Part shown: positions 28,196 to 40,347 of the stretch, piece after piece
How positions within the stretch are numbered: position 1 is the stretch's first letter
Layout: each line of letters starts with the position of its first letter
DNA from: Pocillopora damicornis
Taxonomy: Eukaryota
Reading direction: 5' to 3'
Length of the DNA stretch: 64,000 bases
Assembly: GCF_003704095.1 (NCBI RefSeq)
Contig: NW_020846294.1
Span: forward strand, 186,001 to 250,000
Program-made: the position numbers and the translations under genes
The notes under the pieces: model-generated
What the model saw: only the letters and a program-made list of their open reading frames with translations
Database searches by the model: none
Told to the model about the DNA's origin: nothing

Positions 28196-30265
28196 ATGAG
28201 CTCTAGTAATAAGGAATTGTTTGTCAACGGTTCTTCGTTCGAAGACGAGTATGGGACTGCGAGACTCGCATCCGTTATTTATCTGTGTGCCGTAGGAGTT
28301 TGTGGGATTATTGCAAACTGTCTGGTGATTTTTGTATTTTGGAAATACCCAAAGCTCAGAACAGCCGCTAATTTGTTTATTCTGAACCTGGCATTCTGCG
28401 ATGTGATGCTTTCCATCTTAGACAATACTTTTTCAATCGCGTCCACGTTGTATGGAAGATGGTTGTTTGGTCGCGCCGGTTGTGTTGTGTACGGGTTTTT
28501 CCACTACTTCTTCATCTGCTGTACCGTTTCAACGCTAGCGGCGATTTCTGTGGATCGATTCTTTTTTATCACCCGGCCGAGCCAGACCCGGGCTGTTCAA
28601 GTAATTACGAGACGAAAGGCGATTGCAATAGTACTCATAATCTACCTTTATACCTTTTTGTTTACATTTCCTCCATGTGTTGGATGGAATTCGTTTGTGG
28701 AGGAAAAAGTTTTTTTCAGTGGCTGTTACATTAACTTTGGCGATCAAAGAACCTCCTCTATTGTTTATTCAGTTATTGCACTTTTTTTTCTTTTCCTCGT
28801 GCCTCTTTCAGTGATGATCTATTGCTACGCGCGCATTTTTGTCGCTGTACGCCGAAGTACGCAGCGTACAATTGGAAGATCACTTGGAACGCCGAATTCT
28901 GTCAAGAAGCGGTATCCCGTCTTAAAGAGAACACACATACAGACTGCGAAAATGATCATAGTTGTTATATTTTTCTCCATGATCGTGTGGGTACCTTATG
29001 TTGTCGTCTCGTTGATCAAAGCTTCGGATAGCTACATTGACCCTCTCCTGTCACACATTACAGTTGTGGTTGCTAAGTCGTGCGTGATTTACAATGTGCT
29101 TATCTACGTGATGTTAAACCGCAAGCTTAAAGCTGCGATTTTGGATGCAGTTTGTTGTGGGAGGCAAAGCTTTTTCCTAATCGGATCACCAAGTTCCGCC
29201 AACAACGTGAACAGAAATAGAATCAGTCGTATTTTGAGCGAAACGGAGGTTCCTTCTCAAGTCGTCGAGGCCCAGAAGAATAGATTGAGTGCTTTGACAC
29301 TGCAGCGATCAAACGAGAATATGCTCGAAGAATTTTCTGATCATCTTTCTCCGCCTTTTATCCCGAAGGTAAAGAATGGTGTTGTGAAAAGCGTAGAGTT
29401 TAAAGATGGCCAAAGAAGAGACACAGTCTTTGGTACTAGTAAAGAGGAGTTGGAAGAAGTTCTAAATGGAAGAGATCCCATACCGGCATCAGAGTCTAAT
29501 GGTGATACTTTTCACCATGGAGAAGATTTTTATTCAAGACGAAAAAAAGTCTCAAAAATACAGCGATCTTTGAATGGAAATCATATGGGTAATGGATCAT
29601 TAATTACCTTGCATGATGGAACATCTGATCAGAATCATTCGCGACAGGGTGCTAGTGAAAAGAGTACACCTTTGAACGCGACAGATGTAACGTCGCCACG
29701 CAATGGTACACTACCAATTGAAAGAACACAACATTTTACGCACGTAACAAATGAAACGCCTCTGTGTACTTTACCACGAGAAACAGCTGGACAGAATCTT
29801 CAACGCGTCTGTCACCTTTATTCTTCGGCTACTAATCCGCGATCGCAAAATCTTTCTTCACCATCGCAGATGTACAAGAAAGGTACAAGACCTGCGAGCG
29901 CGCAACGAGTAAAGAAGAGAGAGTCACCCGATTCGAGTATTCCGCGCGCGAGTACGAGCACTGATCAAGAAAGCGATCTCTCGAGGACTTCTCGCGAGGG
30001 ATCTTTCGTTCAACGATCGGTAAGTAATTCACACAAAACTAAGAAACTACGATCTGGAAATCGTAGAACGAACGGGAAAAATACGATGCCATCGCGAACG
30101 AAAAGTCACGCAAGTTATGGGAGAAGGGGCCACATATCAAACAGGGATCCACTCCAAACTTCCGCCCATGAATTGCTGGAAATACAGAATTTTTGGAAGC
30201 GCATGAGTCTGTGTCTAGACGATATTGATCTGGATGAAGTGACGAGAGAGATGGAAATGGTTTGA
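28196..30265 (+). CDS. Opsin (anthozoan, intronless) with ~370-aa C-terminal tail
   Basis: 7TM class A GPCR: LRTAANLFILNLAFCD, TM3 Cys, DRF, ECL2 Cys, WVPY, and the TM7 retinal-binding Lys (VVAKSCVIYN; K294, codon 29075-29077). Confidence 0.93.
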   Translation: MSSSNKELFVNGSSFEDEYGTARLASVIYLCAVGVCGIIANCLVIFVFWKYPKLRTAANLFILNLAFCDVMLSILDNTFSIASTLYGRWLFGRAGCVVYGFFHYFFICCTVSTLAAISVDRFFFITRPSQTRAVQVITRRKAIAIVLIIYLYTFLFTFPPCVGWNSFVEEKVFFSGCYINFGDQRTSSIVYSVIALFFLFLVPLSVMIYCYARIFVAVRRSTQRTIGRSLGTPNSVKKRYPVLKRTHIQTAKMIIVVIFFSMIVWVPYVVVSLIKASDSYIDPLLSHITVVVAKSCVIYNVLIYVMLNRKLKAAILDAVCCGRQSFFLIGSPSSANNVNRNRISRILSETEVPSQVVEAQKNRLSALTLQRSNENMLEEFSDHLSPPFIPKVKNGVVKSVEFKDGQRRDTVFGTSKEELEEVLNGRDPIPASESNGDTFHHGEDFYSRRKKVSKIQRSLNGNHMGNGSLITLHDGTSDQNHSRQGASEKSTPLNATDVTSPRNGTLPIERTQHFTHVTNETPLCTLPRETAGQNLQRVCHLYSSATNPRSQNLSSPSQMYKKGTRPASAQRVKKRESPDSSIPRASTSTDQESDLSRTSREGSFVQRSVSNSHKTKKLRSGNRRTNGKNTMPSRTKSHASYGRRGHISNRDPLQTSAHELLEIQNFWKRMSLCLDDIDLDEVTREMEMV

Positions 30266-39045: not shown

Positions 39046-40347
39046 ATGGGAGAGTCTTTAAACTTTACCGGAAACAATTCACAAGGAACAGATAAACTGG
39101 GAGAGCATGATCTTGCTGTTATAAGCGCCTACGTTTTTATTGTGGGAGTCCTTGGTTTTATCGGAAACTTGTGGGTGTTAATCGCTTTTTGTTGCTACAA
39201 AACTCTGCGGACGACAACAAATTTATTTATAGTTCATCTTGCTGGCTGTGACTTGATATTGGCGGTGATGGATGTGGCTTTTTCTTTTCCTTCCACTGTA
39301 AAGCATCGCTGGCTATTTGGAGCTGTTGGGTGTGAAGCGTTTGGTTTTGTTTACCACTTTTTAAACGCAATGTCTTTCAACACCCTGGCTATAATCTCGC
39401 TCGACCGCTTCTGGGTAATCACGAAACCGTCTTTTGGCGCGAAAATTACCGTGAAACGCGCGTTATTTTGCGTGGGGTTAACGCACGTGTACACACTGTT
39501 TTTCACGCTGCCAATCATTTTCGACTGGATTGGTTTCCAAGAGGAGATTTACTTCACTGGCTGTTATCTAAATTTTGAGAATAGAGACGAACGGACGGTG
39601 ATATACTCCATAGCTGTGGCGATATTTTCATTTCTGGTGCCATTTGTAATCATGATCTATTGTTACTTTTCGATTTTTGCGTCGGTTCGCAAACGTGGAA
39701 AGGAAAACAATTACCTGAAAAAAAGGCGCAGGAAAAATTGCAAATTTACCCTCCCACATTGGAGGACTGCGCGAATGATCGTTGTTGTAATTTTCGTGTT
39801 TTTATTGTGTTGGTCTCCTCATGTTATTGTATCTTTGTGTGTATCGCTCGGAATCAAAGTTTCGATTTTAGTTCAAGAAGTTACATTGCTTCTTGCAAAG
39901 TCAGCCATTATTTACAATCCTTTCATATACGCTGTGCTGAATCATCGCTTCAGACACGCCTTTATTGGAATGTTTTGTCAGAACCGGAGTCAGGAAAGTA
40001 ATGGCGCCGATTGCAGCCGGACGCCAGTCGCCAGTGGTGGACCTGGGTCGAGTTTTAGGATTCCTCGAACAAGCGCATCCGCCAGAACATTGTCGGAACG
40101 GTTATCCGAGAGAGAATTGGGTCGAGAGTCTGCGGATCAGTGTAGGCTAAAAAGTATCAGCTATTGCAAGAAAAGTTTGACGATTTGTAGCTCGGGAGAG
40201 CTACCTTGCGCTCATAATGTAGCACTGGAACAAAACGATCCAGAGGAAACTATGGGTAAGGCAGTAGCACTCGAAGAAATAGGAATGGATAACGACGAAG
40301 AGGAGGGAATTAGAAAGAACGATTTGATCACCATCGAACAAAATTAA
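39046..40347 (+). CDS. Opsin (anthozoan, intronless), paralog of 28196-30265; 433 aa
   Basis: gccATGg at 39046; GN in TM1, LRTTTNLFIVHLAGCD, DRF, CWSP, TM7 LLAKSAIIYNPFIY with the retinal Lys (K285, codon 39898-39900). Confidence 0.94.
   Translation: MGESLNFTGNNSQGTDKLGEHDLAVISAYVFIVGVLGFIGNLWVLIAFCCYKTLRTTTNLFIVHLAGCDLILAVMDVAFSFPSTVKHRWLFGAVGCEAFGFVYHFLNAMSFNTLAIISLDRFWVITKPSFGAKITVKRALFCVGLTHVYTLFFTLPIIFDWIGFQEEIYFTGCYLNFENRDERTVIYSIAVAIFSFLVPFVIMIYCYFSIFASVRKRGKENNYLKKRRRKNCKFTLPHWRTARMIVVVIFVFLLCWSPHVIVSLCVSLGIKVSILVQEVTLLLAKSAIIYNPFIYAVLNHRFRHAFIGMFCQNRSQESNGADCSRTPVASGGPGSSFRIPRTSASARTLSERLSERELGRESADQCRLKSISYCKKSLTICSSGELPCAHNVALEQNDPEETMGKAVALEEIGMDNDEEEGIRKNDLITIEQN

What the first reader, a model, noticed from the sequence alone, without database searches (positions are those of the whole stretch)
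28196..40347. Both tandem opsins carry Asp at rhodopsin position 90: candidate new Schiff-base counterion or tuning site
Seen: counting from the conserved TM2 Asp (D83 in bovine rhodopsin), opsin 1 reads D-V-M-L-S-I-L-D and opsin 2 D-L-I-L-A-V-M-D. Both therefore have Asp at position 90 (D76 in each; codons 28421-28423 and 39271-39273), although the flanking residues have diverged. Position 113 is Tyr/Phe, 94 is Ser/Ser and 292 is Val/Leu. Known: animal opsin counterions are described at 113, 181 and 94 (box jellyfish), with E292/chloride in some coral opsins. G90D in human rhodopsin causes night blindness because D90 interacts with K296, and K90 tunes invertebrate UV opsins. Inference: a naturally conserved D90 could act as a primary or co-counterion, shift the spectrum, or give dark activity.
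Basis: partly seen in the sequence, partly recalled or inferred. Interest (0 to 1): 0.85.

Follow-up and report, generated by a model that had tools for sequence, protein, structure and literature searches.

The report
Conserved Asp90 in coral ASO-I opsins
Two neighbouring coral light-receptor genes, the ancient ASO-I opsin pair, carry an acidic residue right beside the lysine that holds retinal; the residue is conserved across corals, sea anemones and soft corals and may act as or assist the pigment's charge partner, but nobody has measured this.

Summary
Both intronless ORFs (28196-30265 and 39046-40347, + strand) are rhodopsin-family GPCRs with the retinal lysine. Asp76 in each (codons 28421-28423 GAC, 39271-39273 GAT) aligns without gaps on residue 90 of bovine rhodopsin and on Asn87 of squid rhodopsin.

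[quoted passage not shown] Among 82 ASO-I sequences, residue 90 is Asp in 76, Glu in 3, Gln in 2 and Asn in 1. Asp is the parsimonious ancestral state. Only 2 of 122 other opsin representatives have an acid there, both gastropod.

ASO-I also keeps the loop Glu (181 equivalent) but has Gly, not Ser/Thr, at 186. No member lacks both acids. Six OP2-type sequences lack the acid at 181 and all keep Asp90.

Position 90 is already a known Schiff-base-proximal site: engineered G90D, squid Asn, arthropod Lys/Asn/Glu. So this is a new natural variant, not a new principle. No ASO-I spectrum exists, and I could not get model coordinates, so a counterion role is inferred only. The scan's other opsin note on this genome concerns ASO-II genes, not this residue.

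The parts
28196..30265 (+). OP1: ASO-I opsin, His117/N-V-x-x-Y subclade (acropsin-3 type). A single coding exon of 689 aa with a long C-terminal tail.
   Evidence: ORF; 7tm_1; orthologues of 644-800 aa in corals and anemones; tree
28421..28423 (+). OP1 Asp76 codon (GAC), bovine position 90 (2.57)
   Evidence: squid alignment
28490..28504 (+). OP1 Tyr99 (position 113) through His103 (position 117, 3.32) on TM3
28703..28705 (+). OP1 Glu170, the structural equivalent of Glu181 (Trp175+6). Lys171 follows it, and a one-residue insertion lies in the hairpin turn.
   Evidence: strands 167-169 and 177-179 in the AF2 model
29075..29077 (+). OP1 Lys294, the retinal-binding Lys296
33825..33992 (+). Non-coding 5' exon of OP2. 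The 3' end is exact; the 5' end is a minimum taken from 168 unmatched contig letters.
   Evidence: RNA contig loose ends located at 33962-33991; GT donor at 33993
33993..38965 (+). GT-AG intron in the OP2 5' UTR
38966..40721 (+). OP2 second exon as covered by poly(A) RNA-seq contigs from two studies. No joint lies inside the CDS.
39046..40347 (+). OP2: ASO-I opsin, Tyr117/NPxxY subclade, 433 aa CDS
39271..39273 (+). OP2 Asp76 codon (GAT), bovine position 90. It is unchanged in four RNA runs.
39340..39354 (+). OP2 Phe99 (position 113) through Tyr103 (position 117)
39541..39546 (+). OP2 Glu166-Glu167 (positions 180 and 181)
   Evidence: ungapped HMMER alignment to bovine P180-E181; strand register in the AF2 model
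39898..39900 (+). OP2 Lys285, the retinal-binding Lys296

Best explanation
The two genes are the tandem ASO-I opsin pair of a pocilloporid coral. In this family an Asp on helix 2 (position 90, 2.57) is an ancestral, selectively maintained pocket residue. It sits two helical turns above Asp83 on the same helix face, at the level of the retinal lysine. My preferred mechanism is that the Asp is ionised and acts as the proximal counterion of the protonated Schiff base, alone or sharing the charge with the loop Glu (181 equivalent). That would keep the pigment sensitive to visible, probably blue, light and would set the Schiff-base pKa. Gly186 replaces the Ser/Thr that normally relays Glu181 to the Schiff base, so the relay would run through Asp90 instead. 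Shown here: residue identity, homology of position, conservation, expression and family membership. Inferred only: orientation, ionisation state, and any effect on pKa or absorption maximum.
For: (1) Asp76 aligns without gaps on D90 of bovine G90D rhodopsin and on squid Asn87. (2) AF2 models of both proteins have TM2 as one unbroken helix (residues 57-85 and 57-86, block pLDDT 86-96). Residues i and i+7 (Asp69, Asp76) therefore share a face. Foldseek's top hits are squid rhodopsin, with G90D rhodopsin 4bez close behind. (3) Asp/Glu occupies position 90 in 79 of 82 ASO-I rows across Scleractinia, Actiniaria and Octocorallia. The two paralogues use different codons, and Asp is the parsimonious root state of both subclades. 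(4) In a set thinned to under 85% identity, the only conserved acids away from the cytoplasmic side are 83, 90 (35 of 37 acidic) and the loop Glu. (5) The two acids are complementary. No ASO-I lacks both. Six OP2-type sequences lack an acid at 181 (Gln x2, Lys x2, Gly, Arg) and all keep Asp90. The Asn90 and Gln90 sequences all keep the loop acid. (6) Position 186 is Gly in 82 of 83 ASO-I sequences but Ser/Thr in 96 of 122 other opsins. Ser186 mediates the Glu181-Schiff base link in spider Rh1 (PMC6513861). (7) There is precedent: D90 forms a salt bridge with K296 and shares the counterion role in G90D rhodopsin (PMC7496284); K90E moves Drosophila Rh7 from 350 to 450 nm (PMC5544684); and a proximal TM2 acid overrides a retained Glu181 in JellyOp (PMC6004467).
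Against: No spectrum, pKa or mutant exists for any ASO-I opsin. A. millepora acropsin 3 gave no response in cultured cells (PMC9884665). The loop Glu, the default counterion of non-vertebrate opsins, is present in both genes and is invariantly acidic in the OP1 subclade. Natural Asn90 (P0002, 91% identical to OP2, every other pocket site examined the same, seen in two runs) and Gln90 (octocoral Xenia) show the charge is dispensable in some lineages. That fits a hydrogen-bonding role like squid Asn. A buried Asp next to a second acid could be protonated. I could not obtain model coordinates, so no Asp-to-Lys distance was measured. The complementarity rests on few lineages, and some of those sequences are fragments.
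Confidence: 0.45

Rival explanations
1. Glu181 is the functional counterion, as in squid, spider and most non-vertebrate opsins. Asp90 is neutral (protonated) or only partly charged. It acts as a hydrogen-bond partner of the Schiff base and as a spectral tuning site, the acidic counterpart of squid Asn90 and arthropod Asn/Glu90.
For: The loop Glu is conserved in both genes and in 55 of 55 OP1-type sequences. Residue 90 varies only among Asp, Glu, Asn and Gln, the pattern expected for a hydrogen-bonding site. r-opsins and melanopsins carry Asn or Gln at the same site. Squid Asn90, Tyr113 and Asn186 lie within hydrogen-bond distance of the Schiff base while Glu181 is the counterion (PMC6513861). 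Published ASO-I papers assume Glu181 (PMC3515558, PMC8097283).
Against: Asp is kept in 76 of 82 sequences although Asn is one mutation away, which suggests the carboxyl matters. Six OP2-type sequences have lost the acid at 181 but none of them has lost Asp90. The usual polar relay at 186 is missing, being Gly. An ionisable group about 3-4 A from a cation would normally be ionised; this last point is inference from the G90D case.
Confidence: 0.35
2. Asp90 has no direct Schiff-base role. It would serve helix 2/3/7 packing or an internal water or ion network, for example pairing with His117 or Tyr117. Alternatively it could act only in the retinal-free apoprotein, as a lock on Lys296 that suppresses dark signalling.
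For: His (OP1 type) or Tyr (OP2 type) at 3.32 is conserved one turn from position 113 and could pair with the Asp. ASO-I lacks Glu113, which provides the apoprotein lock in vertebrate opsin; that role for Glu113 is from my own knowledge and was not checked here.
Against: In every opsin where it has been studied, position 90 lines the Schiff-base region (PMC6513861, PMC7496284, PMC5544684).
Confidence: 0.12
3. The genes are not photoreceptors, for example retinal-independent GPCRs, so the Asp has nothing to do with a chromophore.
For: A. millepora acropsin 3 gave no light response in cells (PMC9884665). The OP1 type lacks the Pro of NPxxY.
Against: Lys296 is present in every sequence that covers TM7. 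A. palmata acropsin 3 activated coral Gq only in light (PMC3515558). The genes are intact, expressed and conserved across Anthozoa.
Confidence: 0.05

Closest known systems
Bovine/human rhodopsin G90D (congenital stationary night blindness; PDB 4BEY/4BEZ)
   Same: It has Asp at exactly the homologous TM2 position, shown by an ungapped alignment. D90 reaches K296 and the Schiff base and shares the counterion role (PMC7496284).
   Different: G90D is an engineered or disease allele on a background that already has Glu113. There it disturbs the E113-K296 lock and causes dark noise. ASO-I has Tyr/Phe113, so the Asp is native and competes with nothing on TM3.
Squid (Todarodes) rhodopsin Asn87 (Asn90 in bovine numbering), with Tyr111 and Glu180
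   Same: It is the best solved relative by both sequence and fold. It has the same triad of positions: a polar residue at 90, an aromatic at 113 and Glu in ECL2.
   Different: Squid has a neutral Asn at 90 and Asn at 186. ASO-I has a carboxylate at 90 and Gly at 186.
Arthropod short-wave opsins and Rh7: Lys90 (UV) versus Asn/Glu90 (blue/visible)
   Same: These carry a natural acidic residue at position 90. K90E moves Drosophila Rh7 from about 350 to 450 nm (PMC5544684, PMC9450095).
   Different: The residue is Glu, not Asp, and it lies within r-opsins. It is treated as a tuning switch with Glu181 as counterion, and it varies between paralogues rather than being fixed clade-wide.
Box-jellyfish JellyOp Glu94 counterion
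   Same: It is a cnidarian opsin with a proximal TM2 acid, one turn above position 90, that takes over from a retained Glu181 (PMC6004467).
   Different: The position is 94, not 90. It depends on Arg186 masking Glu181, whereas ASO-I has Ser94 and Gly186.
Coral ASO-II opsins with a chloride/Glu292 counterion
   Same: They are anthozoan-specific opsins with a non-canonical counterion arrangement (PMC12401545).
   Different: They form a separate clade with introns and have no acid at 94, 113 or 181. ASO-I has Val/Leu292 and keeps Glu181.

Membership tests
Animal (type II) opsin | Rhodopsin-family 7TM fold | tested here: met
   Both match PF00001 at E about 1e-45. AF2 models show 7 helices plus helix 8. 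Foldseek's top hits are squid and bovine rhodopsins.
Animal (type II) opsin | Retinal-binding Lys296 in TM7 | tested here: met
   OP1 K294 and OP2 K285 align on K296.
Animal (type II) opsin | Cys110-Cys187 disulfide pair | tested here: met
   C96/C177 in OP1 and C96/C173 in OP2.
Animal (type II) opsin | Forms a light-absorbing pigment with retinal | not testable with these tools
   The only published evidence is indirect: A. palmata acropsin 3 activated Gq in light (PMC3515558).
ASO-I (anthozoan-specific opsin I, acropsin-3 group) | Groups with named ASO-I members, apart from other opsins | tested here: met
   The clade has 100% SH-aLRT support and includes Nematostella A9UMX9 and A9UMY4 and an A. 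millepora 666-aa protein. The outgroup is r-opsin-like and other opsins. This is the quick IQ-TREE, because the careful search did not finish.
ASO-I (anthozoan-specific opsin I, acropsin-3 group) | Intronless coding sequence; two ancient subclades, usually one gene of each | tested here: met
   Each gene is a single ORF. RNA contigs show no joint inside the OP2 CDS. The genome holds only these two ASO-I genes. The tree shows two subclades. This matches the description in PMC10512536.
Opsins using the distal Glu181 counterion (squid/spider type) | Glu at 181 in ECL2 | tested here: met
   OP1 E170 and OP2 E167, by alignment and by the strand register of the models.
Opsins using the distal Glu181 counterion (squid/spider type) | Polar residue (Ser/Thr/Asn) at 186 relaying Glu181 to the Schiff base | tested here: not met
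   Gly in both genes and in 82 of 83 ASO-I sequences. It is Ser/Thr in 96 of 122 other opsins.
Opsins using the distal Glu181 counterion (squid/spider type) | No acidic residue proximal to the Schiff base (positions 90, 94, 113, 117, 292) | tested here: not met
   Asp is present at position 90.
Opsins with a proximal counterion at position 90 | Acidic residue at 90 | tested here: met
Opsins with a proximal counterion at position 90 | Carboxylate within salt-bridge distance of the Schiff-base nitrogen | tested here: inconclusive
   Support comes only from homology and helical periodicity.
Opsins with a proximal counterion at position 90 | Neutralising the residue deprotonates the Schiff base or lowers its pKa | not testable with these tools
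   This needs expression, spectroscopy and pH titration.

The most novel reading that the evidence does not exclude
Asp90 is the primary dark-state counterion of ASO-I pigments. That would be a further natural amino-acid counterion position in animal opsins, after 181, 113 and 94 (plus Cl-/292). It would be fixed since before the hexacoral-octocoral split, in the opsin lineage that several phylogenies place as sister to all other animal opsins. A proximal TM2 counterion would then be very old, and not only a late innovation of vertebrates and box jellyfish.
Probability: 0.3. Interest if true: 0.75.

Novelty: new variant of a known kind. Interest (0 to 1): 0.55.

Why it matters
Where the counterion sits governs visible-light sensitivity, Schiff-base pKa, bistability and G-protein activation efficiency. 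Its moves from 181 to 113 and to 94 are landmark events in opsin evolution. ASO-I is the least characterised cnidarian opsin group, with no published spectrum, and it is often recovered as sister to all other opsins. The papers I searched on ASO-I discuss only positions 83, 94, 113 and 181. A clade-wide Asp at the Schiff-base-proximal position 90, together with Gly186, gives a concrete mutational hypothesis that is cheap to test. It also comes with natural controls: Asn90 in a sister species and Gln90 in Xenia. If confirmed, it would revise the view that Glu181 alone was the ancestral counterion, and it could supply a Gq-coupled blue-light scaffold for optogenetics. If refuted, it is one more tuning-site variant.

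Tried and rejected
(1) I tried to measure the Asp90-Lys296 distance. Structure prediction returns only confidence and secondary structure, and /data holds no coordinates. No distance was obtained, so the orientation argument rests on homology and helix periodicity.

(2) I considered that the ASO-I-invariant Glu is not at 181, because counting back from Cys187 it falls at 180 and OP1 has Lys at Cys187-6. I rejected this for OP1. OP1-type proteins have a one-residue insertion in the hairpin turn. Counting from Trp175, and the strand pairing in the OP1 model (167-169 with 177-179, loop pLDDT about 92), both put Glu170 at the 181 position. In OP2 the second Glu (E167) is 181.

(3) I looked for other candidate pocket acids. 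OP2 Glu111 is Arg in anemones, so it is not conserved. Positions 94, 113, 117 and 292 are never acidic.

(4) I asked whether Asp90 could be an assembly or sequencing artefact. This is rejected: the codon is the same in four poly(A) RNA-seq runs from two studies and in near-identical database proteins.

(5) Literature searches for a native Asp90 or for ASO-I spectra found no paper describing Asp90 in ASO-I or any ASO-I absorbance spectrum. The library is incomplete, so this is not proof of absence.

(6) The careful maximum-likelihood search did not finish in the time allowed. Only the quick tree is reported.

(7) Read laying was limited to one stretch, so OP1 expression was not examined directly.
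Full report
**What is there.** The stretch holds two long ORFs on the + strand: 28196-30265 (689 aa, here OP1) and 39040-40347 (433 aa from the ATG at 39046, here OP2). Both match Pfam 7tm_1 at E about 1e-45. Their best solved relatives are squid rhodopsin (E about 1e-36 to 1e-38), then bovine rhodopsin and jumping-spider rhodopsin. 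Each has the retinal lysine (OP1 K294, OP2 K285), the Cys110/Cys187 pair and a D-R-F motif.

**Checking the observation.**
- HMMER aligns OP2 to chain 4bey_A without a gap from TM1 to the end of TM3. That chain is the bovine G90D night-blindness mutant; the sister entry 4bez is titled so.
- In that alignment Asp69 falls on D83, Asp76 on D90, Cys96 on C110 and Phe99 on E113.
- In the squid alignments the same Asp lies on Asn87 of the motif S-L-V-N-G. That residue is called Asn90 in bovine numbering (PMC6513861).
- Tyr/Phe at 113, Ser at 94 and Val/Leu at 292 are also as stated.

**What the genes are.** Close homologues come from scleractinian corals. OP1 is 92% identical to a Stylophora pistillata protein, and other hits include Oculina and Acropora millepora 'melanopsin-like' proteins. 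More distant homologues come from sea anemones: Actinia, Exaiptasia, and Nematostella A9UMX9 and A9UMY4.

Published work describes these as the anthozoan-specific opsin I group (ASO-I, acropsin 3). The group is intronless, has two ancient subclades with usually one gene of each per species, and is often placed as sister to all other opsins (PMC10512536, PMC8097283, PMC9884665).

A quick maximum-likelihood tree of 95 sequences recovers ASO-I with 100% SH-aLRT support and two subclades. OP1 falls in the His117 / N-V-x-x-Y / long-tail subclade. OP2 falls in the Tyr117 / NPxxY subclade. The careful search did not finish.

A six-frame search of the window's own 234-Mb assembly finds only these two ASO-I genes. 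The next hits are about 30% identical. Two cnidopsin-like genes elsewhere in the genome have Ala or Thr at position 90.

The tandem linkage appears conserved. Adjacent Oculina gene numbers, one Actinia contig, one 52.5-kb contig and one Xenia scaffold each carry both types.

**Expression and gene model.** Poly(A) RNA-seq contigs from two studies cover 38965-40721 with no joint in the coding sequence and no change at the Asp76 codon. Of 12 coding differences seen in one study's runs, 7 are synonymous. The contigs continue upstream into letters that lie at 33962-33991 in the window. These are followed by GT, and AG precedes 38966. OP2 therefore has a non-coding 5' exon and a 5-kb GT-AG intron in its UTR. 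One run uses another 5' exon ending near 34765. OP1 expression was not examined.

**How conserved is Asp90?** Across 82 ASO-I rows that cover the site, residue 90 is Asp in 76, Glu in 3, Gln in 2 and Asn in 1.
- OP2-type sequences have Asp in 26 of 28, including a deep branch that contains octocoral Xenia.
- OP1-type sequences have Asp in 50 of 54. The exceptions form one clade of four, with Glu or Gln, that includes Xenia.
- Asp is therefore the parsimonious ancestral state of both subclades and predates the hexacoral-octocoral split.
- In a set thinned to under 85% identity (37 sequences), the only conserved acids outside the cytoplasmic face are position 83 (Asp/Asn), position 90 (35 of 37 acidic) and the loop Glu.
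- By entropy, position 90 ranks 61st of 292 columns. It is conserved, not invariant.
- As background, 122 Lys296-bearing non-ASO-I representatives among the 150 best hits in a 1.84-billion-protein library were examined. They have Gly 55, Asn 16, Gln 14, His 9, Ala 8, Lys 2 and Asp 2 at this site.
- The two Asp cases are gastropod 'rhodopsin, GQ-coupled-like' proteins from Babylonia and Haliotis. They sit among r-opsin-like sequences, so they represent an independent origin.

**The rival acid: the ECL2 Glu.** The register needed care. Counted back from Cys187, the ASO-I-invariant Glu is at -7, whereas the bovine and squid counterion is at -6. OP1 has Lys at -6.

OP1-type proteins, however, have one extra residue between Trp175 and Cys187. 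The OP1 AF2 model (mean pLDDT 82.7, loop about 92) pairs strands 167-169 with 177-179. This puts Glu170 opposite Gly176, as Glu181 lies opposite Ser186 in bovine rhodopsin, with the extra residue in the turn. In OP2 the model pairs 164-165 with 174-175, and the ungapped HMMER alignment agrees, making Glu167 the 181 equivalent.

With this register, the acid at 181 is present in 55 of 55 OP1-type sequences but only 22 of 28 OP2-type sequences. The six OP2-type sequences without it carry Gln twice, Lys twice, Gly and Arg. They include Nematostella A9UMY4 and a Xenia protein, and all six keep Asp90. Conversely, the Asn90 and Gln90 sequences keep the loop acid. No ASO-I lacks both. The numbers are small and some sequences are fragments, so this is suggestive only.

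Position 186 is Gly in 82 of 83 ASO-I sequences but Ser/Thr in 96 of 122 other opsins. Ser186 is the mediator of the Glu181-Schiff base interaction in spider Rh1 (PMC6513861).

**Structural reasoning.** Both AF2 models show TM2 as one uninterrupted helix (57-85 and 57-86, block pLDDT 86-96). Asp69 (2.50) and Asp76 (2.57), seven residues apart, therefore lie on the same inward face, two turns apart. Foldseek ranks squid rhodopsin first and G90D rhodopsin 4bez fifth. Nearness to the Schiff base rests on three published cases:
- In squid rhodopsin, Asn90, Tyr113 and Asn186 are within hydrogen-bond distance of the Schiff base (PMC6513861).
- In G90D rhodopsin, D90 forms a salt bridge with K296 and shares the counterion role with E113 (PMC7496284).
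- In Drosophila Rh7, K90E moves the maximum from about 350 to 450 nm, and arthropod UV versus blue opsins differ by Lys versus Asn/Glu at this site (PMC5544684, PMC9450095).

A 2026 preprint lists position 90 among sites where native or introduced Asp/Glu can serve as counterion (10.64898/2026.07.01.735937). From my own memory, and not checked here, Rao, Cohen and Oprian (1994) showed that D90 can replace E113 as counterion, and FTIR work in 1996 suggested that E113 is protonated in dark G90D.

**Most likely mechanism.** I favour, at about 0.45, that Asp90 is ionised and is the proximal counterion of the protonated Schiff base, alone or shared with Glu181. A negative charge close to the Schiff base would be expected to give a blue-shifted visible pigment with a high pKa.

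The main rival, at about 0.35, is that Glu181 is the counterion as usual and Asp90 is a neutral or weakly charged hydrogen-bond and tuning residue, like squid Asn. The natural Asn90 variant supports this rival. P0002 is 91% identical to OP2 with the other pocket sites examined the same, and it occurs as identical 1.7-kb contigs in two runs. The octocoral Gln90 forms support it too.

A purely structural or apoprotein-lock role gets about 0.12, and a non-photoreceptive role about 0.05. In rhodopsin the Asp acts by disturbing the Glu113-Lys296 lock, which ASO-I does not have.

**Comparison with what is known, and novelty.** The genes are ordinary members of a described family, and position 90 is an established Schiff-base-proximal tuning site. 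What I did not find in the literature searched is any mention that ASO-I carries a clade-wide Asp at 90 with Gly186, or any ASO-I absorbance spectrum. ASO-I papers tabulate positions 83, 94, 113 and 181 and assume Glu181. I therefore class the finding as a new variant of a known kind. It is a sound, testable hypothesis of moderate interest and is not demonstrated. The scan's other opsin note on this genome concerns ASO-II genes and a chloride counterion, a different matter.

**Limits.** There are no coordinates, no energetics and no experiment. The tree is a quick search. Homologue sets are biased toward Scleractinia. Only OP2 was checked in RNA data.

Noticed in passing
window 29093-29107 (OP1 N300-V301-L-I-Y304): OP1 and its whole subclade lack the proline of the NPxxY motif. 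Position 7.50 is Val in 47, Ala in 5 and Ile in 3 of 55 sequences, while the OP2 subclade keeps NPxxY. This is unusual for a class A GPCR and may bear on the failure to see signalling from acropsin 3 in cultured cells.
   Followed up: partly
window 28502-28504 (OP1 His103) and 39352-39354 (OP2 Tyr103): Position 117 (3.32), one helical turn from 113 and near the Schiff base, is His in 53 of 55 OP1-type sequences and Tyr in 26 of 28 OP2-type sequences. It is a possible partner of Asp90, for example an Asp-His pair that senses pH or binds an anion.
   Followed up: no
window 28721-28723 and 39559-39561 (Gly at position 186): Gly186 is nearly invariant in ASO-I (82 of 83 sequences), whereas 96 of 122 other opsin representatives have Ser or Thr there.
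   Followed up: partly
L001:130-1437 and L002:130-1437 (protein P0002): A natural Asp90-to-Asn variant (GAT to AAT) occurs in an orthologue 91% identical in protein and 88% in nucleotides to OP2. All the other pocket sites examined are the same. It was seen as identical 1.7-kb contigs in two independent public runs, and the species was not identified. It is a ready-made natural control.
   Followed up: partly
proteins P0213 (Babylonia areolata) and P0225 (Haliotis asinina, with Haliotis relatives in its cluster): Gastropod 'rhodopsin, GQ-coupled-like' opsins also have Asp at position 90, together with Tyr113 and Asp/Glu181. They group with r-opsin-like sequences, so this is an independent origin. 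I did not search the papers for them, so I do not know whether they have been characterised.
   Followed up: partly
window 33825-33992, 33993-38965 and about 34736-34765: OP2 is transcribed from a non-coding 5' exon about 5 kb upstream, in the gap between the two opsin genes. A canonical GT-AG intron lies in the UTR. One RNA run uses an alternative 5' exon ending near 34765.
   Followed up: yes
proteins P0097 (cluster includes a Xenia protein) and P0098: OP2-type ASO-I sequences on the deep branch that contains the Xenia protein lack Cys110 (Ala or Gly there) while keeping Cys187, Lys296 and Asp90. The conserved extracellular disulfide seems to be lost in that lineage.
   Followed up: no
window 29231-30262 (OP1 C-terminal tail, about 345 aa): The long Ser/Thr/Arg-rich tail of OP1 has no Pfam match. 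Its length, however, is kept in orthologues (644-800 aa proteins) from corals to anemones. OP2-type proteins are short in corals (433-480 aa) but long in anemones (650-690 aa).
   Followed up: no
window 39334-39336 (OP2 Glu97, position 111): A Glu directly after Cys110 is conserved in scleractinian OP2-type proteins but is Arg in sea anemones. This is a charge reversal at the extracellular end of TM3.
   Followed up: no
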